DNA of 64,000 nt from Octopus sinensis. Its lineage: Eukaryota. Made by a program: the position numbers and the translations under genes. Positions 297 through 64,000 of the stretch are shown here, in pieces (position 1 is the first letter of the stretch; each line of letters opens with the position of its first letter). Where the stretch lies: positions 65,162,001-65,226,000 of the forward strand of contig NC_042999.1 in the NCBI RefSeq assembly GCF_006345805.1. The letters run 5' to 3'. The notes under the pieces are model-generated. The model saw nothing but the letters and a program-made list of their open reading frames with translations. It was not told the origin of the DNA and did no database searches.

Positions 297-341
297 TGTC
301 GCTGAAGAGGTCGCAGATGTGTGACGAAAGATTTCCGGACA
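297..341 (+). ncRNA. Minimal type I hammerhead ribozyme-like motif (Penelope pLTR type)
   Basis: TGTCG-CTGAAGA-G-GTCGCA(gatg)TGTGAC-GAAA-GATTTC-CGGACA: core CUGANGA at 302-308, 6-bp stem II, GAAA at 326-329, stem I TGTC-G/C-g-GACA with one bulge. Stem III is imperfect. Confidence 0.55.
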
Positions 342-5081: not shown

Positions 5082-5308
5082 AACTATCAGATTAGGAGTA
5101 GCAAATTTAGTTAATCAAACAACTGAATTAGTTATCATATAAAACCAACGGAGGACCTATAAATTATACAATGCCAACTGAGTTTGCTATAGATTTGAAT
5201 TATGTATCATATCTGTGATGGTCCTTGATTTCGAGGTTTGAACTGCCTCCATAGCACTGATGCAATTACGACTGTAATTTGAGTTAAAGACCCAACGAAC
5301 ATTTTACG

Positions 5309-5532
5309 ACCACCATCACCACAACCGCCACCGCCACCACCGCCACCGCCACCACCACCGCCGCCACCACCACCACCACTACCACCACCACCACAACAAC
5401 CACCGCCGCCGCCGCCACCACCCAACATCCCAACCCGGTCGTTCCCACACAACCACCATCGCCACCACCGCACCACCACCACCACCACCACCACCACCAC
5501 CACCACCACCGCCACCACCGCCGCCACCACCC
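5309..5532. repeat. (CCA)n/(CCG)n trinucleotide tract
   Basis: Direct inspection; source of the poly-G/V/W ORFs on the minus strand. Confidence 0.95.
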
Positions 5533-5542
5533 AACATCCCAA

Positions 5543-5935
5543 CCCGGTTCGGTCCTGTGCTCCCACCCACACTGCCACACTTGCTCTTACCTCTCCAACA
5601 CCACCCTCCTCACAAGCACCTATCATCGACCATATCATATCACTGACTCCTTCACTTGCACTTCTAGCAACATCATCTACTGCATCTCCTGCTCCCTCTG
5701 TGCTTCTCTATATATAGGTCAAACGGGACGCCGCTTGGCTTACCGGTTCGCGGAACACCTCAAAGACATCAGACACGGCAACGTCAACCAGGTTTCGCGC
5801 CATCTCCGCTATACCGTTCATTCTTTACAACACCACACCACATCACCATACCCCGCGCACACTAGCATTGACCACTTCCCAGCACCTACACCATCATCCA
5901 CACACACCTACACGTGCAAACACGTTATCTGCTGA
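5543..5935 (+). mobile_element. Penelope-like element fragment encoding a GIY-YIG endonuclease
   Basis: One open frame from 5543: PGSVLCSHPHCHTCSYL...DSFTCTSSNIIYCISCSLCASLYIGQTGRRLAYRFAEHL, matching the Penelope C/H-rich linker plus the IY..YIG..R..EH motif. Confidence 0.85.
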
Positions 5936-6290: not shown

Positions 6291-6661
6291 TTCTTTCATT
6301 CATTTTGACCGCGGACATGCTGGAGCACCGCCTTAAAGGATTTCTAGCCGAAGCAATCAACCCCATGATTTATTCTTTGTAAGCTTAGTACTTATTTTAT
6401 CGATACCTTTTGCTGAACCGCTAAATTACGCGTACGTAAACACAATATCGGTTGTCAAGCCATGACGGGGGACTAACACAGATATAAAGACACACATACA
6501 GAAATATATATACTTATATATTTACGATGGGTTTCTTTTCAGTTTCCGTTTACGAAATACACACACAAGGTTTTAGTCGGAAGACATTTGCTTAATGGTC
6601 CACGCAGTGGGACTGAACCCGGAACCACGTGGTTGGGAAGCAAGCTCCCTACCATAGTGCC
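6291..6661 (-). mobile_element. SINE family A
   Basis: Reverse complement of the family A consensus (tRNA head GGTTCAGTCCCACTGCGTGG; tail GGCGGTGCTCCAGCATG.CCGC.GTCAAA.TGA). Confidence 0.85.
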
Positions 6662-6684
6662 ATATATATATATATATTTATATA

Positions 6685-6734
<50 letters not shown>

Positions 6735-6860
6735 TATATAACAATTTAGGAATGGCCTAAACAGGCCATTCGTCCACCAGAAAGAGCAGCCAGAACTCCA
6801 ACCGCCAAGTAGTGTAATTCGGAAATAAGGTGAAAATTTAAAAACATTTACCCTAATTCA

Positions 6861-6961
6861 TCTTTTATACGATGCATCGTTTCAGTGTCTTTAATGATAG
6901 ACCAGCTTAATTAAATTAAATTAAGCTAGTCTACCATAGGTCACACTTCCTCAGTAAAAGA
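6861..6961 (-). ncRNA. Type I hammerhead ribozyme
   Basis: Minus strand reads TCTTTTA-CTGAGGA-AGTGT-[about 55-nt insert with 15-bp hairpin]-ACACT-GAA-ACGATGCATCGT-A-TAAAAGA: perfect 7-bp stem I, 5-bp stem II, palindromic stem III, GUA cleavage triplet (cut between 6868 and 6867). Confidence 0.85.
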
Positions 6962-7335
6962 AACCTGGGAGAGACGGATATACACGAGGCGACTGTATCA
7001 ATGCCTCGGGAATATCTGTCTTAAAATTTTCAAGACCAACGCATTCGCGCCAAACTTATCGGCAGCAAATATAAACTGCCGATTCAATCTCAGAATTAGT
7101 CAGAAAATTATCAATTAATCAATTTAGGGTAGCAAAAAATTCAGTAAAAATTTATCGCTACCAGCGGCCTAGTGGAAAAGAGAAAATAGTCAAAGACTAA
7201 ATATGTATAAATATAACAATTTAGGAATGGCCTAAACAGGCCATTCGTCCACCAGAAAGAGCAGCCAGAACTCCAACCGCCAAGTAGTGTAATTCGGAAA
7301 TAAGGTGAAAATTTAAAAACATTTACCCTAATTCA

Positions 7336-7429
7336 TCTTTTATACGATGCATCGTTTCAGTGTCTTTAATGATAGACCAGCTTAATTAAATTAAATTAAG
7401 CTAGTCTACCATAGGTCACACTTCATCAA
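7336..7429 (-). ncRNA. Truncated second hammerhead copy
   Basis: Stem II, GAAA, stem III and the 3' strand of stem I match the first copy. The core reads TTGATGA and the 5' strand of stem I is replaced by (TA)n. Confidence 0.6.
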
Positions 7430-9285
7430 CTTATATATATATATATAAGTTCAGCAAACAATTTAGATTCAAATGAATATGGTACTTAATTTAGATGTAC
7501 CAGAATCTTTTTATGGTATTACCCATAAAAATACGGGGGGTAATTATAATAAAAAAATAAGCAACAAGAATGGGTATATATATATGAATCCCTCTCTCTG
7601 TCTACACACACACACACACACACACATGCATATCAGATATATATAGAAGGCAACAGAAAGAGTGAGAGAGGGGAGAGGATAAAAAGACGGAAGGGAGGAG
7701 AACAGAGAGGGAGAAATCAGGAGTAGGAGGAGAAATCAAATGTTTATTTCTGCATATGATATAACTATACTTATGAACCTGCGAGTGGTTCTGAGTTCAA
7801 GTCTCACCTACCACTCTCTTGATTTTGTGCTTCCAATCAATAAACCTCTGTATCTGGACTACCAATACATGCTATAATACCCGTGGTTTTGAAACTAACA
7901 ACCCAACTGATATTTTCTCAGAGGGCGCGTTAACCTATGTATGATAACCCTTTATACTCTGTATTACCGGCTCAACTCTCGATACACTTAGTTTTAAGTA
8001 TTTATTCTAACAGAAGTCAATATCTCAAGTCTATACCTGAATAGATCTATGCTGTTTGAGAGATATAATATTATAAGATAACATTTCTAAGTTGTTGTCT
8101 GATTGTCAGCTTTTCATTAGACATGTACATACATATAATTTCTTCTTAATTCGTTTAAAAAAAACATGGCGCTTATTCTCAGTTTCCCTTCCGGATGTAA
8201 CTATTGACTCTCTCGCTTATTTTTTCTTCTCTGTTAACTTTCCTCATAACAACTCGCCTTCCGTCTCTCTTTTTACTCCATATTTTCTTCTCGTATACGT
8301 TTATTTTTTTATTTTACTCTCTTTGTCTCTCTGTGTGTCTTGCTCTGAAATTCTCTTGTATTATAATAGTATCGATTTGTTTCTGTATCCAAATATACGC
8401 ATATGCACACATATAAGAATTGCATTCAATAAAGAAGAAAGAAACGCCTGCTGGTATTGGTGAATGAAAATTGCAGAGCGAGATGTAGCCCGAAGCATTT
8501 GTTCATTTTGACCGCTAAATTACCTGGGTTAATAGAATTTTCTTCCAGGCTGTCTGTTTATTATTCTAACCTCTAATAAATACGATTTTTTTCTCTCACC
8601 TATCAATGACTTTTTCCTAAGGAAGAAACTTCCTTTTTTTTCTCCCGATAAATCTTTTCTTCTATCGGAATGTATGTGAGCGTGTGTATGTGTGTTCATA
8701 TGTGTATGCGTTGATCTCTGTGTATGTTTGCTAATATCCGAGAGAGTATGCAATTTCATGTGACGTCGGTTGTGTTGTAAAGTGAAAGCAAGATTATAAA
8801 TCTATGAATAGAAGTTGTTACGTCTCTTAGCTAATTTCTAAGACTGTTACATTACGAGGTGTATATCATCGTTCTAGTCACCATCTGCTTCGTCGTCACC
8901 GTCATCATCAACATCATCATTGACTCTGAGAAAATGGGAGTAGCGAGAAAACAAAAATGCTTTCTGCGACGTATCTTTATGCCTTAGTTTCGAACCTCAT
9001 TGGGGAATAAACGTTTCGTCATCAATTTGAGGTTGAGAATAAATACTACCGAAGTAATCGATTTTAATTTTGTCGCTTATGTCCTTCCTCAAAATGTCTA
9101 GTGTCATGCTTATTAATTAACGTCTGCGTTTCACCGGAAATGTGTGTACGTTTACTTAAAATGTACAAGCAAGTTTATTATTTATTCCTATTTAGCCAAC
9201 CGCTGTATATATTAACGGAAAATAAAATAAAACACTCAGCAGATTTTGTTATATACACTGTTCATGTATATATGAATATATCATA

Positions 9286-10320
9286 GCACCGCGAGTGCCG
9301 CGTTGCTCTCAAGCAACTATGCCGTCCCGGGTCGACCTTGAGTGACTTCAACACAACCAAAGCATTCTATAGGGGATTAGTGAAGGGGAGGTAAGACGAC
9401 GATCTCGGGGCGAACCTGGGCGTCGACGAGGAATACCTGGCCCGCCTGTTCAAGAAGACTTTTGCGCCGGGACCTATGGACAACTTCCAGAGATCCCTGG
9501 CCTGGCAGTGCTACTGAGAAGTGCTACCCGTTCGGGACAAGCTTTACAGACACGGCTCGAGAAACACGGGGCCGACCTGCCCGAAATGCGGTCAGAGCGA
9601 CGAAACCGTTCTGCACGCACTCGTACAGTGTCCAACTATTTGCGACCTGTGGGCTTATGTCGAACGACTGCTGTCACGTGTGGGACGAGTTGGTATATCA
9701 GCCGAGTCTATCGTCAATATCGTCACCCCTCCTTCCTTCAAACGAGAAGGAAGAGATATTTTCATCATACTTGTGGCTATGGCAAAAGAATGTATCTCGT
9801 GGACGCATCTGAAAGGATTAGAAACAAACACTTTCCTCTCTGGTCAATCTCTCATCAACTTCTTCAAGTATCACTTGAAAAGGAAAGTGAGAGTAGAAAG
9901 GCAAGTTTTGTCTAGCGAATGTTTAAAGAAAAGATGGGTGAATGTAGCAAGGATGGCACGTATGAATGACGAAGCCACCTTGCGCATAATCCTGTGAACC
10001 CGGAAAAATTTAAAACAGAGAGTTACTTACTTGCAAATAAATGTGTTAACATGTGACATTATTGACCGAGGTTACTACTGTGGTCTTTTCCGTAGGCTTC
10101 TCTTTCCACGGATAAACCTTATCTGTTTCCCCCATTACACTTTACATCATGACATTTCTGTGATACACGATCACTGTTGATCGTTTTTTTTTGTTCTCTC
10201 TTTCCTTTTTACGATCCCTTTTGATCGAAAACCTACCCTTTTTTATCCCCTAAAAGAAAAGCTATACTTTGTAATCTGTCCCGTCTGTGTTCAGCCTTGT
10301 GTGGCTAATAAAGAAACATA
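9286..10320 (+). mobile_element. 5'-truncated L1/Tx1-like LINE (ORF2 C-terminus with CCHC finger, plus 3' UTR)
   Basis: FQRSLAWQCY*EVLPVRDKLYRHGSRNTGPTCPKCGQSDETVLHALVQCP (zf-RVT-type). The 3' end GTGTGGCTAATAAAGAAACATA is shared with copies at 55451-57276. Confidence 0.9.
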
Positions 10321-15780: not shown

Positions 15781-16664
15781 TGTTTTAAATTTTAGAAGGT
15801 GTTAATCATTTAAGTCAACCTCAGTAATTGACTGCTACATTGTTTTATCGACACCACAATGATGCAAGGCAAAATTGATCTCAGCGAAATTTTAATTCAT
15901 AATGCAAAGAACTAACTGAAATCCGCAGAAATCTGGTGCTGTAATGACTCGTAATTATCGGGTTTATGTCGCAACATAAGTAACTGCCTGTATTAAAAAT
16001 AAATGAAGAAAAATTGAGTCGATATTGATTGTATAAAATCAATATCGACTCTCAAATATCCTGCATTCATTTTTAATACAGACGGCGATTTAAGTGCCTT
16101 ATGCCTGTACAGAAAGGCCAACCGTATACAACAATAGAAGATAGTTGAACGCAGGTAACGTGTCATGACAAATTCAATAAAGTTTTTTTCTTCTGAACCT
16201 ATGAAGTGAAAATGAAAAATACTCATTACTTTTCAATGTCCTCACTGACTTGTGACACAGCTCTGGTTGATGTTCAGTTTTGGTCAATTGTTAGACAATG
16301 TGGGAAATGGTAAATACACGAGAGTTTCAAGTCTGGATAGGGAAACATGATCGAACTGTATCGAATGACAGTGAAAATCTATACAATGGTTATACAACGA
16401 GAAAGACAACAAAACAATTGATGAACGTAGTTACAAAAGCGGATTCCTATGAGAGATTGTTTAATATACAATAAAGAAATTTAGAACGGTTAATAACAAA
16501 TTTATAGTCATTTGATTTCTAGAAGAGTATAAAAGATATATTGAAAAAAATATACAAGGGACAGTATTCACTATTTAGGAGAATTAATAAAAGCATTATA
16601 AAAAAAGAAAGATTATTGAGAATATGTGACAATACTGCATTTCCTTAATAGTATTAATAGTTTC

Positions 16665-18559: not shown

Positions 18560-18962
18560 GCGCAGGAGTGGCTGTGTGGCAAGTAGCTTGCTTACCAACC
18601 ACATAGCTCCGGGTTCAGTCCCACTGCGTGGCATCTTGGGCAAGTGTCTTCTGCTATAGCCCCGGGCCGACCAATGCCTTGTGAGTGGATTTGGTAGACG
18701 GAAACTGAAAGAGGCCTGTCGTATATATGTATATATATATGTATGTGTGTCTGTGTTTGTCCCCCTAGCATTGCTTGACAACCGATGATGGTGTGTTTAC
18801 GTCCCCGTCACTTAGCGGTTCGGCAAAAGAGACCGATAGAATAAGTACTGGGCTTACAAAGAATAAGTCCAGGGGTCGATTTGCTCGACTAAAGGCGGTG
18901 CTCCTGCATGGCCGCAGTCAAATGACTGAAACAAGTAAAAGAGTAAAAGAGTAAAAGAGAGT
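18560..18962 (+). mobile_element. SINE family A, full length
   Basis: GCGCAGGAGTGGCTGTGTGG...GGTTCAGTCCC head, internal (TA)/(TG) tract, tail CAGTCAAATGACTGAAAC and (AGTAAAAG)n. Confidence 0.92.
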
Positions 18963-20344: not shown

Positions 20345-20733
20345 GGCGCAGGAGCGGCTGTGTAGTAAGTAGCTTGCTTACCAACCACATGTCTCCGGGT
20401 TCAGTCCCACTACGTGGCACCTTGGGCAAGTGTCTTCTACTATAGCCTCGAGCCGACCAAAGCCTTGTGAGTGGATTTGGTAGATGAAAACTGAAAGAAG
20501 CCCGTCGTATATGTGTATATGTATCTGTATATATATGTGTGTCTGTGTTTGTTCCCCCAACATCGCTTAACAACCGTGTGTTTACGTCCCCGTAACTTAG
20601 CGGTGCGGCAAAAGAGTCCGATAGAATAGGTACTAGGCTTACAAAGAATAAGTCTTGGGGTCGATTTGCTCGACTAAAGGCGGTGCTCTAGCATGGCCGC
20701 AGTCAAAGGACTGAAACAAGTAAAAGAGTAAAG
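20345..20733 (+). mobile_element. SINE family A, full length
   Basis: High similarity to 18560-18962. Confidence 0.92.
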
Positions 20734-31700: not shown

Positions 31701-34110
31701 GGAATACTCAGTGATAGTGAGGCCGAAATGGCTTTTGAGACGCTTACGAACTTTCATGCGTGTCAATCTTGTTTAGAATTAGTAGTGTGCGCTAGTATGT
31801 CTGAAGGACGTGAGATTGAAATGAGCTTTGTGGGGCTACAACAGAAAGCAGCTTCTATTTTCGTGACGTAAGATTAATTTCATACCAACTATTTTCGAAG
31901 CGAACATCTTAATCACAATTTTATTCATTAATCTATATTATTGTCTAATCAGCAAACGCAAATTGCAGAGTCTGTCACTCGTAGGGGAGAATGCGTTGAT
32001 TTTGCGGTAATCCCTTAAGCCCTTAACATCCAAGGGCTCAAATTCTATCGAAGCCAATCTTCACTTTTCATCAATTTGATGTCGAAAAGTAGAGTACCAA
32101 TTCTGTATTAATTTACATACTTTTTTCCCCTAGAGTCAGCTTTCGTGTCCGTCATTTTCACTTCTGGAAAAGACTGCAGTCAGACGTAGGGAGGGATAGA
32201 GTCACGAAGTCTAAAATTATTCCAAAATCACAACATATGTCACGACGCCATCTAAACTACTTCATCAAAAATGAAGCCCCTCTGGCATGCCATGCATCGT
32301 CTACAAAATCTTGATTAAGTAATAATAACAGGAAATTAATTACGTACGAATAATATTTACTAAGTGGCAGTTGTGATGAATGAGATTAGAATTAAGATTT
32401 TAACATTTTAACACTCTCGAACTTTCCACAATGTTGAAATCAAATTGCGAAATTTATGATTTGTTTTGGAAACAGTCGTGAATAGATCTTGGCAGACAGA
32501 ATTTCGGCTAGAAATAGAAAACCTTACGTAACAAAGTTACCAAACAAATTTCTTTAAATACATTCCAGTTTTTAATTTCTGTAACTTCAGTAAACCAATG
32601 CCAAACTTTGGCACAACGTTTTACTGACATTAAATTACCTATCGTGTTTCAGTGCAGTAAAAATATACTTGCAGAGTCATTATTAACTCATCAGAGCTAA
32701 TACTTAATGACACAAAGCAATGACATAGCCAGCTTTTATATAAGATGTTTGTGTCGTTGCATAATGAAAATTGATTTTATAGTATAATGAAATTGGCACA
32801 GAAAATATCTGTTTCCAGTGTGAAATCTCTAAAGGTATGCAGTATTGGCTGTGAGGAGTATTTAATTGGGAGTTGATCTACGTAAAACCGATGTAAAAAG
32901 CGTTGAACACTTAACATATTGGAAAGAAAATGTTGAGCTGTCACTTTAGTTCTCTCGATAAAGAGAACTGTCTTCTCTTCGTAGCATCTGTTCGTGTAGT
33001 TGGTTTTGAATTTATAAATACTCCTGAATGCATATACACATGCACTCACGCACATGTATAAAAATACATACACACATATATGCACGCAACCTTATATTTT
33101 CTTTTCTCTGACGTGTGTGTCTCTCTTTCTCTATCACCATCTGTTTCTGTTCAGTAAAAGACTTGATTAATGCAGGTCTGCAGCTTAGTATGCTACTACA
33201 CGTTGCATAGCAATTAATATATCAACTGATTCCCATTCATTTGGACGGAGATTGAATTTTCGTGGTTCTGTGTTCAAATTAAAGTCGTCGTAAAATATAA
33301 AGTTTTATGGTAAACTTTTCTGCAAATAATGTTTCCTTCACTAACACCATAGATGAAAGATGACCTGCCACATAGAAGGATTTTGATTTGATTAAAAATT
33401 AAGATACCTTACTTTCAAATTCTTTCCAACATATTTGTAGATTTTCCACTGAAGTACAAGAGAAGAGAGTTCTTCTGTATACAGATGCTTACCCATGGCC
33501 CTGTTGCGATCTCAACAGAAATTCGCTTTGTATGGAAGACAAAGGATGCATCAAACTTCTTTTTTATCGGGGAGACAGAGCAGAAAATGCTTAACCCTCT
33601 TTCAAAATTGAGCAGAATATTATGTAAGATTCAAGCGCTGCTTGACCCAAAGGAAGTTGACAAGAAATGTATAGTTACTTAATGTGTTATTTTTACCAAG
33701 ATTATATATGGCACACATTAATTTCTTGTCTACAATTCAGCGAAAATCATGAAATGTATCATAAAAAGATCTGTGCCACAATTTCTGCCTTGCAGAAGCA
33801 AACCGGCCACGATGTGCAAAACCCATGAAGAATATAGTAGCAGGAATAAGACTTTCAAATGTCCTTATAAATAGAAAAAGAACCACACTATCCACTTTGG
33901 ATATGTTCTAACAGACCAGGAGCAACGAAATACATTGTTGAGGTCACGAATAGTGAAGAATCAACAATTATATAGTGACAGACTGAATGGCCCGAGGAAT
34001 ACTCAAGCAGTTGAACAGATTCATTTGAAGTGTAGCATTAACTTATAACGAAAATAATGATAATAATAATAATAATAATAATAATAAGGATGATGATGAT
34101 GATGATGATG

Positions 34111-35280: not shown

Positions 35281-35861
35281 TTTTTTTTTGAAAGGGAGAA
35301 ATGACTGTTTTATTTGTAAGCTTTATCATCTTAATCAAAGGGCAGGAAAATAGAAAAACTTTGAGTTTTAGCATAATATAGACATATTGAAATATATTTA
35401 TATAACGCTACGCAGTCTGGTTTTTTTTTACTCAGTTGTAAAATGTTCTTGGAATATTTTTCTGCGACGTCTTTTATGTCTTTCTCTTTCTTTGTATATT
35501 TTTTGCCATCCACCCCCTCTCTCTCTCTTTCCCTCCTTAATACTTTACTTCTTCCTTCGTTCTGACTTTCTATCTGGCCTTCTGCCGTCTCCAGTTCTAC
35601 AGGACATTTTCGTTTTTCTTTGCGTTACTGTCTTGCAGCCGCACGTCTTTCTTAGTGAAGTATGCTTCTTTTGTCGTATTTATTTTCACCGTTAAAGGCG
35701 TGAAATTGTAAGGATATTTGCGACGTTGGCTGATGAGGAGTAAGCTACGAATTTTCTGTTTGATATGTTCTGGTAAAAAAATCCGTTTGTTGTGTTTTTA
35801 TTAAATTTTTGAAATATACATATGGTCCTTTATTATTTTACACGTTTCAAGTGATTGTGTC

Positions 35862-36212
35862 CTGCTGGGGCACCGCCTTTAGTCGAAGAAATCGACCCCC
35901 AACACGTATTCTTTGTAAGACTAGTACTTATTCTGTCGGTCTCTTTTACCGAACCTCTATATTTCGGGGGGCATAAACATATCAACATCGGTTGTCAAGC
36001 AATGGTCGTGTGCTAAGGAGACAAAAATTCCCACACATAATTATATATACATATATGTACACGACGGGCGTCTTTCAGTTTCCGTCTACTAAATCCATTC
36101 ACAAGGCTTTGATCGGTCCGGTGCAATAGTAGAAGACACCTGCTCAAGGTGCCACGCAGTGGGGTTGAACCCGGAACCATTTGGTTGGGAAGCAAGCTTC
36201 TTACCACATAGT
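35862..36212 (-). mobile_element. SINE family A
   Basis: Reverse complement match to 18560-18962. Confidence 0.85.
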
Positions 36213-37287: not shown

Positions 37288-37507
37288 TTACTCTTTTACT
37301 CTTTACTCGTTTACTTGTTTCAGTCATTTGACTGCGGCTATGCTGGAGCACCGCCTTTAGTCGAGCAAATCGACCCCGGGACTTATTCTTTGTAAGCCCA
37401 GTACTTATTCTATCGGACTCTTTTTGCCGAACCGCTAAGTGACGGGGACGTAAACACACCAGCATCGGTTGTCAAGCAATGCTAGGGGGACAAACACAGA
37501 CACACGA

Positions 37508-37560
<53 letters not shown>

Positions 37561-37700
37561 TACAACAGGTTTCTTTCAGTTTCCGTCTACCAAATCCACT
37601 CACAAGGCATTGGTCGGCCCGGGGCTATAGCAGAAGACAGTTGCCCAAGATGCCACGCAGTGGGACTGAACCCGGAACCATGTGGTTGGAAAGCAAGCTA
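37288..37700 (-). mobile_element. SINE family A
   Basis: Near-identical reverse complement of 18560-18962. Confidence 0.92.
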
Positions 37701-38340
37701 ACAAAACATACTGGTAAATCAATCTGTGATAAACGAATCATTTTCACACATTTTGTACATGGAACGATTTAGATGATTCACTTGCATTAAACTTGTGCCC
37801 ACAATAGTAGAGCCTCCATCTTCGCGTGTTTTCTTGATTAACATTCAAATAGAGAAGATCAAATACATTCTCCGGCCTTATATGTTATACTCAGGCACCT
37901 TCCTACTTCACTGGTTCACTGGTTCCTTGTTAATGGGCACGAGTACGTAAGTTTATATAAAAAATAGACTGCTTCGCAGCACTGTCTGGGGGCAAAGACT
38001 GTAGTCAGTGCATTGTGGGGAGCTGAGCTGTGTGGCTGGATTACTGTACTGCTGTATAATTCAGAGAATATTTTCTATCTCATTTTTCTTTCTGAGATAT
38101 TAAGATAACATAGTATTTAACGTTTCTCTTATCACATACACGGTACATTATGAATTCCAGATAGTTTATTGGCCTTCAATATTTGTCATGGTTTGAAAAT
38201 TACAAATTAGTATTAAATTCAGTTAATATTAATTCGTGTATAGAAATTATTATTTCCATCTTTTATACATGCGTATTCAACATATGTTGTAGTAGCAGCA
38301 GCAATTACAACATATGTTGAATACGCACGTATAAAAGATC

Positions 38341-38992
38341 ACTCTACTGTATGGAAGTGAGACCTGGACACTATGCACACGCCAAGAGCGTCGCCTAAAT
38401 ATCTTTCACCTGCGCTGCCTCCGAAAAATCCTCCGCATCAAATGGCAGGATCATATCCCCAACAAAGATGTCCTCAGGCAAGCAGGAATACCAAGCATGT
38501 TTGCGCTCCTCACACAAAGACGTATGAGATGGCTTGGGCATGTTAGCCGTATGAAAGATGGCAGAATCCCCAAAGACATACTCTACGGAGAGCTTGCTAG
38601 GGGTACTAGGTCTGTGGGTAGACCGATCTTACGTTACAAGGATGTTTGCAAAAGGGACATGAAGGCCTGCAACATCAATATTAGCGGTTGGGAGGCAGTT
38701 GCCGGCAACCGTGGAGAATGGCGACGTACCGTAAAAGAGGGAATACAAAGGAGTGACAGAGAGAGAGAGGAGAAATGGAAAGAAAGGAAGAGACGTCAAC
38801 AAGAGACTATGGCACTACAACCAGCCAGGAACAGTCTTCGCTACATTTGCGGTACCTGCCAGAGGGAGTGTTTGTCCAGGATAGGACTACACAGCCACAG
38901 CAGGAAATGTATCAGGACATGAAATATAAAAGCCGGACTAGACTACTTTGTGCGCAACTCCATTGTCTCCCGAGACAGAAAGGATGCCAATT
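38341..38992 (+). mobile_element. 5'-truncated RTE-clade LINE (frame open 38341-38922)
   Basis: TLLYGSETWTL...FHLRCLRKILRIKWQDHIPN...RRMRWLGHVSRM..RIPKDILYGEL..GRP..RYKD; C-terminal C..C..CLSRIGLHSH..C finger; 3' end ATTGTCTCCCGAGACAGAAAGGATGCC. Confidence 0.93.
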
Positions 38993-45263: not shown

Positions 45264-46308
45264 GTGGCCCTTTCAGACATGCCTTCAGTTGCTACGATGG
45301 CCACCCTTGCTAGCTATGCAGATGACACAAAAGTCTCCCACACAATACAAAACCCTGAAAATATTGCGCATCTGCAACAGGAGTTGGATAAAATATACAG
45401 GTGGGCGGAGGACAACAACATGCAGTTTAATGCAGGTAAGTTCCAGGCCCTGCGCTACCGGCACACAAACGTAAACGACGTGCAGACTGGATACACTGGC
45501 CCAGGAAGAATTGCAATCCCTGAGTCAAAATCAGTGCGTGACCTAGACATTGACATGAGCAATGATGCATCTTTCCAAGTGCATATTACTAATCTGGTGA
45601 TAAAATGCAGACGGCTAGCTGGATGGATTCTCCGAAATTTCAGAACAAGAGAGAAGGAGACACTGATGGTCCTCTGGAAAACATTCATCCTTAGCCGCTT
45701 GGACTACTGTTCCTAACTATGGTCACCACACAATATAAAACTAACAGCAGAACTCGAAGCAATTCAGAGAAGCTACACAAAGAAAATCGTCTCAATGCAA
45801 AATATCAGCTACTGGGAAAGACTGAAAGTATTAAACCTCTTCTCCCTAGAGCGGAGTTGGGAGAGATATGCGGTGATATCCATCTGGAAAATACTGGAGG
45901 GTCTTGTCCCAAACTTTGGCATTCAAAGTTACCCCAACCGCAGAACGGGGTGCCACTGCATGGTGCCAAAGATTCCAACATCACCATCAAAATACAGGAC
46001 CAGATACTGCAACAGCTTGGGTTTCAGAGGACCACAGCTCTTTAACATCCTCCCTAAATGCCTGAGAGACTTACATGGTGTAGATGTGGGTTTCTTAAAA
46101 ACTAAACTGGATCTCTTCTTGTCGGGAGTCCCAGATGAACCTACTTCACGACAGGAGACGCAGATGCGGGTAGCAGCATCGAACTCCCTTGTTGATCAAG
46201 TGCCACGTATCAGAGGTGGATTCACATATTAGTGTAGCTCATTCAGCGGTGGTGCCCCAGCATGACCGCAGCCTTCGGGCTACAACATTTTTAAGGATTT
46301 AAGGATTT
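45264..46308 (+). mobile_element. 5'-truncated CR1-like LINE (RT C-terminus to 3' end)
   Basis: ASYADDTKV...MQFNAGKFQAL...VRDL.I...SRLDYCS*LWSP...LEAIQRSYTK...SYWERLKVLNLFSLER...GPQLFNILP...KTKLDLFL..VPDEP; tail GGTGCCCCAGCATGACCGCAGCCTTCGGGCT and (TTTAAGGA)n. Confidence 0.93.
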
Positions 46309-58300: not shown

Positions 58301-58447
58301 CAGAAACAAACATACATGCACATAAATATATACATACATATATACATATATTTATATCCATTTATGCACACACACAAACACACACACACAAATATACAAA
58401 CACGCAAGCACCACCACCCATATATATATATATATATATATACATTC

Positions 58448-58785
58448 AACAATATAAGGAATGGCTTGACAGGCCATTCGACCCGACTAGAAAGAGCAGC
58501 TAAACTCAAACCGCTAAATATGTAATTCAGAAACCAAAGGAAAAAAAAAAAATTACCCTTATCATCTTTGGACTATGCATAGTTTCGACATACATATTGG
58601 CAACCGATTAAATTAAATTAAATTAAATCTATTTGCCATTGGCCTGTCTCGTCAGCAAAGAAGCCAGGGAAATATATATCCACGAGGCGACAGCATCGAC
58701 GCCTCGAGAATATATATTCTAAATTTTCAAAATCTACCGTCACCGCGCCCCAACTTCTCAGCAGCAAATATAAACTGCCGATTTC
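58448..58785 (-). mobile_element. Diverged single copy of the hammerhead-bearing non-coding unit
   Basis: Collinear with 6741-7085 (GGAATGGC..ACAGGCCATTCG, AGAAAGAGCAGC, CACGAGGCGAC, GCAGCAAATATAAACTGCCGATT); flanked by (TA)n. Confidence 0.8.
58565..58661 (-). ncRNA. Type I hammerhead ribozyme
   Basis: Minus strand reads TCTTTG-CTGACGA-GACA-[insert with TGGCAA/TTGCCA stem]-TGTC-GAA-ACTATGCATAGT-C-CAAAGA; GUC triplet, cut between 58571 and 58570. Confidence 0.87.
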
Positions 58786-58822
58786 ATTTATATATATATA
58801 TAATATATAATATATATATATA

Positions 58823-60034
58823 CATGGGGTTGGACAAAATAATGGAAACAACTTAACATTTCAAACACATTTATTTTAATATGGGGTAGGACCGCCTTTG
58901 GCTGTAATTAGAGCTTGAATTCAAACTCGTACAAAGTTTGAATTGTTTCCAAAGGAATCTTAATCCATTCTTCATGTACAACAGTCTCCAGCTCTTGTAG
59001 TGATGATGGTGGAGGATATCAACTCCTTATTTGCTTTTCTAAAATGCACCATAAATTTTCAATAAAACTGAGATCCTGGGACTGTCGTAATCAGATAAGA
59101 TTTTCAACTTCACTAGAATGTTTCTCGCGCGATACAGTAAACAAATTTAGCTGTGTGAATTGATGCATTATCATCCTGAAAGATTGCGTTTCCCACCGGA
59201 AACAGTTCTCCAATCATAGGATGAATTTGATCAGATAAAATGCTTAAACAGTCTTGACTATAAATTTTGCCACGAAGGGAAAACATTTGGCCGGCTGATT
59301 TCCAAGATATAGCTCCCCCAACAGATCATCACAAATCCTCCTCCATGTTTAACAGTTCGATTTTTTTTGGTAAAGAATGACTCGTACCGAGAAAATAACA
59401 TTCTGCCATTGCCCCAAGAACCAATTCTGTAGGTTTTTACTCCATTCAAAACATTTTACAACGTTTGATTTTGAAAGCAGTGGTTTTCTGATTGCAAATT
59501 TCCAGTGAAATCCGGCTTAGTGCAGCTCCCGACGAACAACTTTTGTGGAAGCTGGGTCCTCGAGATACTCATTAACATATGCAGTAATTTTGAGAGCTGT
59601 ACGCTTGTGACACTTTCTAATAATTCGCGTCAGAGTCCGAGGGTCCCTATCTAAAAGTTTGGGATTTCTTTCGGAGTTGTGTTTCCACGAGGAGGTTTTT
59701 CCCACTTACTCAAAGGATGACATTACTTACAAGACAGAACTTCTTGATACGCCAAACATTTTGACTGTTTTCGTTGCGCTAGCGCCTGCCATGCGAGCGC
59801 CTGCCATGCGAGCTCTTTGAAATTCCGATAGATCTGTCGTTTTAATGAATCTTAATTAGATTTTTCCTGATGATATCTGAAAAGAAACATCAATTTTAGC
59901 AAAACATATTCAGCAACGCTAATAATCAATTAAAAAAACAAACAAAAATAAACAATCTTTTGACGGTTTTATAGATATTTCAAAAGTATGATGCTATTAT
60001 ACTAGGTGTTTCCATTGCTTTATCCAGCATCTAC
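58823..60034 (-). mobile_element. Tc1-family DNA transposon, decayed second copy
   Basis: AIFQDDNASIH and QSQDLSFIENLW; degenerate TIRs (GGACAAAATAATGGAAACA / TGTTTCCATTGCTTTATCC); homologous to 11314-12518. Confidence 0.88.
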
Positions 60035-63177: not shown

Positions 63178-64000
63178 TAGTTGAAGGGGTAAAATCAAGC
63201 CCAGCCAAAGTCAGTAGTGGCGTTCCGCAAGGCACTGTGTTGGGCCCACTTCTTTTCATCATTTACATTAATGACATTAATGACATCATCAAGCACAGCA
63301 ACATAAAAATCTTTGCAGATGACTCCAAGCTACAGAAGGTCATAAATGAGGCGAGTGACCGGACATGCCTTCAGTCAGATCTACTGGCTGTTATCCAATG
63401 GGCAGAAAAAAACATATGCTGCTGAACGAGGATAAATTTGAGCTAATCCACTTTGGAAAAGAGGATGCCCTGAAACTCCCACACTCCCTTCCTTCAGGTG
63501 AAACTCTCGCGGCGTCCAACAACATCAGAGACTTGGGAGTAATTGTGACAAACAACGTAAGCTGGGCCACTCATATAAACACCAAAGTTGACATGGCCCG
63601 CAGAATGTGTTCCTGGATTCTCAGAACTTTCCAGTCGAGAGATATCCACACCATTATCCTTCTCTTCTCCACTTTTGCCCGACCCCACCTTGAATACTGT
63701 TGTCCACTGAGGTCTCCCCACACAATACAAGGTATCATAAAAGTTGAAGCACCTCAAAGGGCAATCACAAAAAAGATAGATAGCATGACAGGCCTCGACT
63801 ATTGGGGTCGGCTAGAAAACCTAAAACTCTATTCTCTCCAACGTCGTCGTGAGCGCTACATCATCTGCATGATGTGGAAAATATTCCATCAGCATTGCCC
63901 AAATGATGTTGGCATCACCTTTAAGGTACATCCAAGGCTTGGGCCCCGTGCCATCCGCCCAAAACACAAAATCGCACTCTCATCTCATAACAACAATACG
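63178..64000 (+). mobile_element. CR1-like LINE RT fragment running off the window end
   Basis: VSSGVPQGTVLGPLLFIIYIND...KIFADDSKL...LQSDL..W; frameshift near 63415; then RDLGVIV..., RPHLEYCCPL*SP and DYWGRLENLKLYSLQRRRERY. Confidence 0.93.

What the first reader, a model, noticed from the sequence alone, without database searches (positions are those of the whole stretch)
6861..6961. Hammerhead ribozyme with an unusually long stem II insert and a 12-nt palindromic stem III
Seen: all core nucleotides are present (CUGAGGA, GAAA, GUA), with a 7-bp stem I. Stem II (AGUGU/ACACU) is extended through an internal loop into a 15-bp hairpin (UAGACUAGCUUAAUU/AAUUAAGCUGGUCUA). Stem III ACGAUGCAUCGU can fold as 4 bp plus a UGCA loop, or pair intermolecularly over 12 bp. 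Known Penelope-type minimal hammerheads typically have a very short stem II, so this architecture looks atypical. Novelty is an inference, since I cannot search the literature or Rfam.
Basis: partly seen in the sequence, partly recalled or inferred. Interest (0 to 1): 0.85.

Follow-up and report, generated by a model that had tools for sequence, protein, structure and literature searches.

The report
Hammerhead ribozyme inside a small retrotransposon
The motif is a genuine type I hammerhead self-cleaving RNA carried by a ~475-nt non-coding retrotransposon of the animal "retrozyme"/Penelope-like kind; this class is already known, and the only unusual feature is a very long, conserved stem II.

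Summary
On the minus strand, 6961..6861 carries every hammerhead core nucleotide and all three helices. Such a motif never appeared in 300 shuffled windows. It is one of three copies of a non-coding repeat:
- A: the full 475-nt unit.
- B: a 5'-truncated copy directly upstream, identical to A over 214 nt.
- C: a 75%-identical copy at 58443-58786, with its own complete hammerhead.

A and C differ by compensatory changes in 12 base pairs. These fall in helices I and III, in the base of helix II, and in the long distal hairpin of helix II. The fold, including the 62-64-nt helix II, is therefore conserved and not a one-off insert.

All element ends abut (TA)n microsatellites. Copies share a 3' end, and 5' ends are truncated or tandem. 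A degenerate Penelope-type GIY-YIG fragment lies 0.9 kb away. Together these fit a non-LTR retrozyme, a non-autonomous Penelope-like element.

The palindromic helix III is ordinary for animal hammerheads. The long helix II is still atypical: Rfam Hammerhead_1 scores copy C below threshold and misses copy A. Cleavage, RNA circles and the mobilising enzyme are inferred, not shown. Interest is modest.

The parts
6861..6961 (-). Hammerhead copy A (complete, type I). Helix I 6961-6955/6867-6861; core CUGAGGA 6954-6948; helix II domain 6947-6884; GAA 6883-6881; helix III palindrome 6880-6869; H17 = A6868; predicted cleavage 6868|6867.
   Evidence: Sequence; fold; shuffle control; covariance model R1, 126 bits.
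6884..6947 (-). Helix II domain of copy A (64 nt). Proximal 5 bp with A10.1-U11.1, a 5x5 internal loop, then a 19-bp distal hairpin 6937-6919/6912-6894 tipped by (UUUAA)n.
   Evidence: The distal hairpin is kept in copy C with 4 both-side and 2 one-side changes. Its 2 G.U pairs would be A.C mismatches on the plus-strand RNA (plus-strand hit).
6736..7210 (-). Full 475-nt unit (copy A) of the non-coding retroelement. It contains conserved hairpins at 7083-7058 and 7008-6985 and a 3'-terminal hairpin GAAUGGCC..GGCCAUUC at 6771-6750. The 3' end reads ..CCUAAAUUGUUAUAU.
   Evidence: Self-BLAST period of 475; alignment; coordinates. The unit between cleavage sites folds with z = -7.9 and is 63% paired.
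7211..7428 (-). Copy B, a 5'-truncated upstream copy forming a partial tandem (pseudo-LTR-like). It is identical to A at 214/214 positions from G8 to the 3' end. It begins at U4 of the core (C3 position = T7429) and lacks the helix I 5' strand. Its substrate side is intact (helix III 7355-7344, H17 A7343, site 7343|7342).
   Evidence: R1 98.5 bits.
58443..58786 (-). Copy C, a diverged (about 75% identical) single copy lacking the first ~115 nt of the unit. It ends with the same 3' hairpin (58479-58459).
58565..58661 (-). Hammerhead copy C (complete). Helix I 6 bp; core CUGACGA; G10.1-C11.1; 62-nt helix II domain 58648-58587; helix III ACUAUGCAUAGU 58583-58572; H17 = C58571; predicted cleavage 58571|58570.
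   Evidence: Rfam Hammerhead_1 matches end to end at 19.7 bits, E 0.013. R1 51.7 bits, E 1.7e-11.
6662..6740 (.). (TA)n microsatellite at the 3' boundary of the A/B insertion. Its partner tract at the 5' boundary is 7432-7447.
58420..58442 (.). (TA)n microsatellite at the 3' boundary of copy C. Its partner tract at the 5' boundary is 58789-58822.
5525..5932 (+). Degenerate Penelope-type endonuclease fragment, giving context only; a link to the element is not shown. It has a CX4CxxC linker followed by NIIYCISCSLCASLYIGQTGRRLAYRFAEH (GIY..YIG with internal cysteines). No reverse transcriptase lies next to it.
   Evidence: translation. Pfam GIY-YIG PF01541 E 2.4e-4, 21.8 bits, just under the 22.6 cut-off, covering profile 3-42 of 78. 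No database homologue found.

Best explanation
The motif is a functional-looking type I hammerhead ribozyme. It belongs to a ~475-nt, AT-rich, highly self-paired, non-coding retroelement of the metazoan non-LTR retrozyme kind, that is, a non-autonomous derivative or passenger of Penelope-like elements (PLEs).

Proposed mechanism:
1. Read-through or tandem transcripts of the minus strand fold the three-way junction.
2. The RNA cleaves itself after GUA (6868|6867) or GUC (58571|58570), leaving 5'-OH and 2',3'-cyclic phosphate ends.
3. Cleavage occurs either in a monomer (4-bp helix III) or in a double hammerhead, in which the 12-nt palindromes of two copies pair.
4. Unit-length RNA can be ligated into a circle by a host RNA ligase.
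5. A PLE reverse transcriptase/GIY-YIG endonuclease copies the RNA into (TA)n microsatellites. This yields the shared 3' ends, 5' truncations and partial tandems.

The long helix II grows out of the position of loop 2, 4-5 bp from the core. It is a conserved part of this family's ribozyme.

Shown here: the motif, its copies, the compensatory changes, the insertion-site pattern and the tandem structure.
Inferred: cleavage itself, circular RNA, the PLE as the mobilising enzyme, and any role of the long helix II.
For: 1. The core and helices are complete in A and C. There were 0 such motifs in 300 shuffles.
2. A and C are about 75% identical overall, yet all invariant core positions are kept. Twelve pairs changed on both sides: helix I 3, proximal helix II 4, distal helix II 4, helix III 1. 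In total 92% of cells are paired. Shuffles gave 4.0 +/- 1.6 such pairs (0 of 500 reached 12), and slid registers gave <=1.
3. Rfam Hammerhead_1 aligns to copy C end to end at exactly the predicted ends.
4. Retroelement signature: three copies share a 3' end and 3' hairpin, one copy is 5'-truncated, and one lacks the 5' 115 nt. A and B form a 475-nt-period partial tandem identical over 214 nt.
5. All four outer boundaries abut (TA)>=5 tracts, whereas only 4.4% of window positions do.
6. PLEs are reported to prefer (TA)n targets and to form partial tandems, giving pseudo-LTRs with hammerheads near the 3' end (PMC8557442).
7. Non-LTR retrozymes are low-GC, highly self-paired repeats with type I hammerheads and consensus lengths of 51-972 bp. 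They are related to PLE pseudo-LTRs (PMC7229834; bioRxiv 10.64898/2026.07.22.740005).
8. The unit here is 36% GC, 63% paired, with z = -7.9.
9. A PLE-type GIY-YIG remnant lies 0.9 kb away.
Against: - No cleavage or expression data exist.
- Only two independent sequences (A/B and C) support the covariation, and the alignment was fitted to the model structure.
- Copy A has A10.1-U11.1 instead of the highly conserved G10.1-C11.1, and GUA rather than GUC.
- The nearest-neighbour probability of the catalytic fold is low: 0.11 (A) and 0.006 (C) in isolation, and about 1e-5 with 40-nt flanks.
- Neither copy reaches Rfam's gathering score.
- No intact PLE is in the window, and the endonuclease fragment has no detectable homologue in the protein search.
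- In the one PLE tested in vitro, hammerhead mutants did not affect insertion (PMC11167929). Ribozyme activity may therefore be dispensable for mobility.
- No relatives were found in the searchable collections.
Confidence: 0.72

Rival explanations
1. Fossil or passenger motif. The sequence descends from a hammerhead but no longer cleaves, or its cleavage is irrelevant. It persists only because the repeat was copied recently. The long helix II would then be a tolerated microsatellite-driven expansion of loop 2.
For: - A10.1-U11.1 and GUA in the young A/B subfamily.
- A (UUUAA)n repeat at the tip of helix II in all copies.
- Low predicted occupancy of the catalytic fold.
- PLE insertion in vitro is independent of hammerhead activity (PMC11167929).
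- PLE hammerheads show low activity in vitro (PMC4209133).
Against: - There are 12 compensatory pair changes and an intact core across about 25% divergence, including 4 in the distal hairpin. This argues for selection on the fold.
- The subfamily with A10.1-U11.1 is the one that inserted most recently, with 214/214 identity.
Confidence: 0.18
2. The element is mobilised by something other than a PLE, such as a LINE acting on a SINE-like RNA with a simple-repeat tail. Alternatively it is a locally duplicated satellite, and the (TA)n flanks are its own tail or a coincidence.
For: - Several LINE reverse-transcriptase fragments are in the window.
- (TA)n tracts are common there, with 63 tracts.
- The authors of the retrozyme paper leave LINEs open as mobilisers (PMC7229834).
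Against: - (TA)n lies on both sides of both insertions, not only at the 3' end.
- A partial tandem with a 5'-truncated upstream copy, plus a hammerhead about 130 nt from the 3' end, is the PLE hallmark (PMC8557442).
- Retrozyme consensus sequences group with PLE pseudo-LTRs.
Confidence: 0.08
3. The 19-bp distal hairpin is the real functional unit, for example a small-RNA precursor or a palindromic insertion. The surrounding hammerhead-like letters would then be incidental.
For: - Many weak microRNA-family hits on the hairpin.
- The region folds with z = -7.8, mostly because of this hairpin.
Against: - All microRNA hits are far below their gathering scores.
- The hairpin sequence differs in copy C, while the flanking core and helices I to III are kept with compensation.
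- A chance occurrence of the full hammerhead descriptor is about 0 in 300 shuffles.
Confidence: 0.02

Closest known systems
Metazoan non-LTR retrozymes (Cervera & de la Pena 2020, PMC7229834; Li et al. 2026 preprint 10.64898/2026.07.22.740005)
   Same: - Small non-coding, low-GC, highly self-paired repeat carrying a type I hammerhead.
- Occurs as monomers, dimers or partial tandems.
- Unit length (475 nt) lies inside the reported 51-972 bp range.
- Co-occurs with PLE sequences.
   Different: - Only 1.46 units in tandem here, and the upstream ribozyme is truncated.
- Helix II is 62-64 nt instead of a 4-5 bp stem with a small loop.
- No expression or circular-RNA evidence.
- Organism unknown.
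[quoted passage not shown] 2021, PMC8557442)
   Same: - Type I topology and a palindromic helix III with potential to act as dimers.
- Located near the 3' end of the unit.
- Partial-tandem structure and (TA)n insertion sites.
- Helix II longer than in canonical animal hammerheads.
   Different: - PLE minimal hammerheads have helix II of 6-8 bp, an extra unpaired base after A9, a short helix I (4-5 bp) and little or no helix III.
- This one has a 6-7 bp helix I continued by an internal loop and CCC/GGG, a 4-bp helix III, no extra base, and a much longer helix II.
- No reverse-transcriptase ORF in the unit.
Rfam RF00163 Hammerhead_1 (type I hammerhead)
   Same: Copy C aligns to all 45 model positions at exactly the predicted ends. 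All core nucleotides are present in A and C.
   Different: The score is 19.7 bits against a gathering score of 34. Copy A gives no hit even at E<=10. The cause appears to be the ~55-nt insertion in helix II and, for A, the A10.1-U11.1 pair.
Chrysanthemum chlorotic mottle viroid minus-strand hammerhead (PMC3705267)
   Same: A natural, self-cleaving hammerhead described as having an unusually long helix II. This shows that a long helix II is compatible with activity.
   Different: It is a type III ribozyme in an infectious plant circular RNA, with no sequence relation. Its helix II length is not comparable in detail from the text available.
Newt satellite 2 / Schistosoma Sm-alpha / mosquito repeat hammerheads
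   Same: Repeat-borne animal type I hammerheads with a short palindromic helix III, able to form a 10-12 bp helix in a dimer (PMC3088659 Fig. S8; PMC4209133).
   Different: They have a short helix II with a terminal loop 2 that contacts loop 1. Here, the position of loop 2 is an internal loop leading into a long hairpin.

Membership tests
Hammerhead ribozyme (type I) | Conserved core C3 U4 G5 A6 N7 G8 A9 / G12 A13 A14 / A15.1-U16.1 / H17 not G | tested here: met
   A: CUGAGGA, GAA, A..U, A17. C: CUGACGA, GAA, A..U, C17.
Hammerhead ribozyme (type I) | Three helices around the core with helix I open-ended, supported by covariation | tested here: met
   Helices I 7/6 bp, II 5/4 bp proximal, III 4 bp. 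Twelve pairs changed on both sides between copies, with 0 of 500 shuffles reaching that number. Caveat: there are only two independent lineages, and the alignment was fitted to the model.
Hammerhead ribozyme (type I) | G10.1-C11.1 closing pair of helix II | tested here: inconclusive
   Present in copy C. Copies A and B have A10.1-U11.1. This is a known conserved position but not an absolute requirement (PMC3088659).
Hammerhead ribozyme (type I) | Rfam RF00163 gathering score (34 bits) | tested here: not met
   Copy C 19.7 bits, E 0.013; copy A no hit. The shortfall coincides with the large helix II insertion.
Hammerhead ribozyme (type I) | Site-specific self-cleavage 3' of H17 giving 5'-OH and 2',3'-cyclic phosphate ends | not testable with these tools
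   Needs in vitro transcription or RNA end mapping.
Hammerhead ribozyme (type I) | Loop 1 / loop 2 tertiary contact of canonical animal hammerheads | tested here: inconclusive
   The geometry fits. Helix I of 6-7 bp is followed by an internal loop closed by CCC/GGG in both A and C. Helix II of 4-5 bp is followed by an internal loop. The loop letters could not be compared with a reference set here.
Non-LTR retrozyme | Short non-coding repeat carrying a type I hammerhead, low GC, no LTR/PBS/PPT | tested here: met
   475-nt unit, 36% GC, no long ORF; hammerhead as above.
Non-LTR retrozyme | Tandem arrangement so that two ribozymes delimit a unit | tested here: inconclusive
   There are 1.46 units in tandem with period 475. 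The upstream ribozyme lacks C3 and its helix I 5' strand. Its cleavage site could be cut only in a double hammerhead that uses copy A's catalytic strand (inference). Copy C is a monomer.
Non-LTR retrozyme | Highly self-paired unit RNA | tested here: met
   Circular MFE -149.7 kcal/mol, 63% paired, z = -7.9 against 100 shuffles.
Non-LTR retrozyme | Expression as circular RNA | not testable with these tools
   No transcriptome is available and the organism is unknown.
Penelope-like element (non-autonomous derivative) | Partial tandem with a 5'-truncated upstream copy (pseudo-LTR) and a hammerhead near the 3' end | tested here: met
   Copy B (218 nt) lies directly upstream of the full copy A and is identical over 214 nt. 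The cleavage site is 132 nt from the 3' end.
Penelope-like element (non-autonomous derivative) | Insertion bias for (TA)n microsatellites | tested here: met
   All four outer boundaries of two insertions abut (TA)>=5 tracts, against a background of 4.4% of positions. The bias itself is described in PMC8557442.
Penelope-like element (non-autonomous derivative) | Sequence shared with the 3' end or pseudo-LTR of an autonomous PLE of the same genome | not tested
   No intact PLE is in the window. The nearby GIY-YIG fragment (5525-5932) shows no similarity to the element in the window self-BLAST.

The most novel reading that the evidence does not exclude
The 62-64-nt helix II may be a functional module rather than a tolerated expansion. 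It could be a protein- or reverse-transcriptase-binding arm, or a folding switch grown out of loop 2. It would then define a class of "expanded helix II" hammerheads that standard descriptors and Rfam models systematically miss. This could also explain why some Penelope-like clades look hammerhead-less or show only "half cores" 35-50 nt apart (PMC8557442).
Probability: 0.15. Interest if true: 0.55.

Novelty: new variant of a known kind. Interest (0 to 1): 0.33.

Why it matters
Hammerheads in animal retrozymes and Penelope-like elements are well known, so the find itself is ordinary. Two points have some value.

1. Detection. This is a natural type I hammerhead whose helix II is about ten times the usual size and is kept by compensatory changes. 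It escapes Rfam's threshold, so current censuses of genomic hammerheads, and claims that some retroelement clades lack them, may undercount such variants.

2. Mobilisation. This locus links a retrozyme-like element to the (TA)n target preference and partial-tandem insertion structure typical of Penelope-like elements. That adds small, independent support for the view that these elements mobilise animal retrozymes.

Tried and rejected
- **Rfam.** At gathering threshold the whole window gave no hits. In E-value mode on copy A there was no hammerhead hit, only weak microRNA-like hits on the hairpin.
- **Simple pattern search.** It returned chance-level hits: 9 found against 11.9 expected.
- **Other candidates from the descriptor scan.** The hit at 35726-35850(+) has helices of only 4/4/2 bp, and 0.11 such hits are expected per window, so it was rejected. 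The hit at 32615-32694(-) has no helix II by eye.
- **Covariance model R1 with filters off.** Beyond A, B and C it hit only plain inverted repeats without a core, at 15990-16079 and 38259-38338.
- **Relatives elsewhere.**
  - The metagenome scan gave 5 contigs representing 2 distinct loci. About 3 chance hits were expected by my own rough estimate. They lack helices I and II and have no similarity to the window, so they were treated as chance.
  - The viral and prokaryote-genome scans gave 0 hits.
- **Organism.**
  - Exact look-ups of two window ORFs found nothing on record.
  - The endonuclease fragment has no homologue in the search.
  - A LINE C-terminal ORF has best hits of only 68% identity. 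Named relatives come from crabs, a gastropod, a sea cucumber and a fish, so the source remains unresolved.
- **Other checks.** ARAGORN found no tRNA. The supplementary consensus file of Craig et al. (hammerhead half cores) is not held.
- **Alternative register for copy A.** Reading an extra unpaired A after A9 with G10.1-C11.1 was rejected, because it would leave an extra U between 11.1 and G12.

Full report
**1. The observation**

The minus strand of 6961..6861 reads UCUUUUA-CUGAGGA-AGUGU...ACACU-GAA-ACGAUGCAUCGU-A-UAAAAGA. This is the complete type I hammerhead layout:
- Helix I is 7 bp and open-ended.
- The core is C3-A9.
- Helix II follows, then G12-A14.
- Helix III is closed by A15.1-U16.1.
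- H17 is A6868, followed by the 3' strand of helix I.

Helix II has 5 proximal pairs and a 5x5 internal loop. The whole domain between A9 and G12 is 64 nt.

The hammerhead fold costs only 0.5 kcal/mol more than the MFE. I wrote a descriptor scan requiring the core plus helix I >=6, II >=4 and III >=4 bp, with helix II up to 170 nt. It found no hit in 300 dinucleotide shuffles of the window and two hits in the real window.

**2. What surrounds it**

A self-comparison of the window shows that 6723-6953 is repeated at 7198-7428, a period of 475 nt. It also shows that 6712-7084 has a 75%-identical copy at 58420-58783, all in one orientation.

Three copies result, all on the minus strand:
- **Copy A** is a full 475-nt unit (7210..6736).
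- **Copy B** (7428..7211) lies directly upstream. It is identical to A at 214 of 214 positions from G8 of the core to the 3' end. It begins at U4, so C3 and the 5' strand of helix I are missing, and N7 differs.
- **Copy C** (58786..58443) lacks the first ~115 nt of the unit.

All three copies end in the same way, with a hairpin GAAUGGCC..GGCCAUUC followed by ..AUUGUU. Two further hairpins (7083-7058 and 7008-6985) are kept in C.

All four outer boundaries of the two insertions abut (TA)n tracts (6662-6740, 7432-7447, 58420-58442, 58789-58822). Only 4.4% of window positions lie within 5 nt of such a tract.

The unit has no ORF of note and is 36% GC. The 475 nt between the two predicted cleavage sites fold with z = -7.9 and 63% of bases paired.

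The rest of the window looks like repeat-rich animal DNA: microsatellites, LINE fragments, a mariner-like fragment and a SINE-like repeat. About 0.9 kb from the element, on the other strand, an ORF fragment carries a CX4CxxC motif followed by NIIYCISC..LYIGQTGRRL..R..EH. This is the Penelope-type GIY-YIG endonuclease signature. Pfam GIY-YIG scores E 2.4e-4, just under its cut-off, and covers only half the domain.

**3. Is the ribozyme fold conserved?**

Copy C has its own complete hammerhead at 58661..58565:
- Helix I is 6 bp and the core is CUGACGA.
- Helix II has a G10.1-C11.1 closing pair and spans 62 nt.
- Helix III is ACUAUGCAUAGU, and H17 is C.

Rfam's Hammerhead_1 model aligns to it end to end at exactly these coordinates, with 19.7 bits and E 0.013 in a 151-nt search. 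This is below the gathering score of 34. Copy A is not reported at all.

A covariance model built from copy A and its hammerhead structure recovers A, B and C (E 1.7e-11 for C). It recovers no other true hammerhead in the window.

On the resulting alignment:
- 92% of cells are standard pairs.
- Twelve pairs differ on both sides between A/B and C: three in helix I, four in the proximal helix II (AGUG/CACU versus GACA/UGUC), four in the distal hairpin and one in helix III. The helix III change (G-C to U-A) keeps the palindrome.
- Shuffles give 4.0 +/- 1.6 such pairs, and none of 500 reaches 12.
- Slid registers give at most 1.

Caveats apply. There are only two independent lineages, and the alignment was fitted to the structure.

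All invariant core positions are unchanged, although the copies differ at about one position in four.

Beyond helix I, both A and C continue with an internal loop closed by CCC/GGG. The ribozyme therefore has the canonical animal geometry: helix I of 6-7 bp up to a loop, and helix II of 4-5 bp up to a loop. The difference is that the loop 2 position opens into a long hairpin tipped by (UUUAA)n.

The two G.U pairs of that hairpin would be A.C mismatches in plus-strand RNA. This points to selection on the minus-strand RNA.

**4. Most likely mechanism**

The element fits the metazoan non-LTR retrozymes. These are short, low-GC, highly self-paired repeats with type I hammerheads. [quoted passage not shown]

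Three features of this locus are hallmarks of Penelope-like elements (PMC8557442):
- a partial tandem with a 5'-truncated upstream copy;
- a hammerhead about 130 nt from the 3' end;
- insertion into (TA)n.

I therefore read the locus as a young insertion, since A and B have not diverged, of a non-autonomous Penelope-dependent element. Its RNA cleaves itself at 6868|6867.

Helix III is weak as a hairpin (-1.0 kcal/mol in A, 0 in C). As a 12-bp duplex between two copies it is strong (-18.7 and -15.9 kcal/mol), so a double hammerhead is plausible. Invertebrate type I hammerheads with a helix III of this size are also reported to cut as monomers (PMC7761336).

One testable inference follows. In a transcript across the locus, copy A's catalytic strand could pair with copy B's intact substrate side and cut at 7343|7342, while A cuts itself. 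This would release the 475-nt unit.

Shown here: the motif, the copies, the covariation and the insertion pattern. Inferred: cleavage, circularisation, the mobilising enzyme and any role of the long helix II.

**5. Points against**

- Copy A carries A10.1-U11.1 rather than the highly conserved G-C, and GUA rather than GUC.
- The thermodynamic occupancy of the catalytic fold is low: 0.11 and 0.006 in isolation, and about 1e-5 with flanks.
- PLE hammerheads are poor catalysts in vitro (PMC4209133).
- In the one PLE reconstituted in vitro, insertion did not need the ribozyme (PMC11167929).
- A fossil or passenger reading therefore remains possible (about 0.18).
- Mobilisation by a LINE, or local duplication, is less likely, because (TA)n flanks both ends and the tandem structure is PLE-like.

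**6.

The stated contrast is wrong, however. [quoted passage not shown]

Most type I hammerheads have 4-5 bp in helix II (preprint 10.1101/2024.05.16.594327), so 62-64 nt is still unusual. Two precedents exist:
- The minus hammerhead of chrysanthemum chlorotic mottle viroid has an unusually long helix II (PMC3705267).
- Craig et al. note hammerhead half cores 35-50 nt apart in some PLEs that do not fit current descriptors.

The palindromic helix III is standard (PMC3088659 Fig. S8).

**7. Novelty and verdict**

This is a genuine hammerhead in a known kind of element, with a conserved structural variant, the expanded helix II, that evades Rfam's threshold. No relatives could be fetched, and the organism could not be named. 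Family-wide statistics are therefore missing.

The finding is of modest interest (0.33). Its main value is as a warning that hammerhead censuses may miss long-helix II variants, and as a small piece of support for Penelope-like elements as retrozyme mobilisers.

Noticed in passing
window 5288-5932 (+), informative part 5525-5842: Degenerate Penelope-like GIY-YIG endonuclease fragment. It has a CX4CxxC linker and NIIYCISCSLCASLYIGQTGRRLAYRFAEH, preceded by an (ACC)n-type low-complexity run, and has no adjacent reverse transcriptase. Pfam GIY-YIG scores E 2.4e-4, just below its cut-off. No homologue appeared in the protein search.
   Followed up: partly
window 302-330 (+): Candidate Penelope-type minimal hammerhead core: CUGAAGA, one unpaired G, a 6-bp helix II (GUCGCA/UGUGAC) with a GAUG loop, then GAAA. 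Helices I (3 bp) and III (1 bp) are weak. This descriptor is expected 0.08 times per shuffled window. It lies at the edge of the window, so any parent element may be outside it.
   Followed up: partly
window 6291-6662 (-), also 18569-18934, 20365-20719, 35863-36206, 37315-37699: Dispersed ~370-bp repeat, about 71-73% identical between copies, that abuts the same (TA)n tract as the hammerhead element. Its head (GGCACTATGGTAGGGAGC..GGTTCCGGGTTCAGTCCC) looks tRNA-derived, with a box-B-like GGTTCAGTCCC, suggesting a SINE. ARAGORN calls no tRNA there.
   Followed up: partly
window 38259-38338 (both strands): An 80-nt near-perfect inverted repeat, TCTTTTATACATGCGTATTCAACATATGTTG..CAACATATGTTGAATACGCACGTATAAAAGA. 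Its ends share the 12-mer CGTATAAAAGAT with the hammerhead cleavage region. It lies directly before a LINE C-terminal ORF (38335-38919). It has no hammerhead core, and the match may be chance.
   Followed up: no
window 38335-38919 (+), 45264-46232 (+), 9373-9994 (+), 63359-64000 (+): LINE reverse-transcriptase and C-terminal fragments. The 38335-38919 ORF has more than 1100 homologues, with best identity 68%. Named relatives come from porcelain and mitten crabs, a dog whelk, a sea cucumber and a catfish. This hints at a widely shared marine-animal LINE family but does not identify the source organism.
   Followed up: partly
window ~58890-59300 (-): Mariner/Tc1-like transposase fragment with stop codons (..IFQDDNASIHTAKF..), immediately upstream of hammerhead copy C.
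   Followed up: no
L001 3962-4049 (+) (same locus in L002, L005): A metagenome locus matching the search pattern carries CUGACGA, a long paired segment, GAA, the same 12-nt palindrome ACUAUGCAUAGU as copy C, and a distal GCCAU/AUGGC pairing. It lacks proximal helix I and a proper helix II base. It was treated as a chance hit but not examined further.
   Followed up: partly
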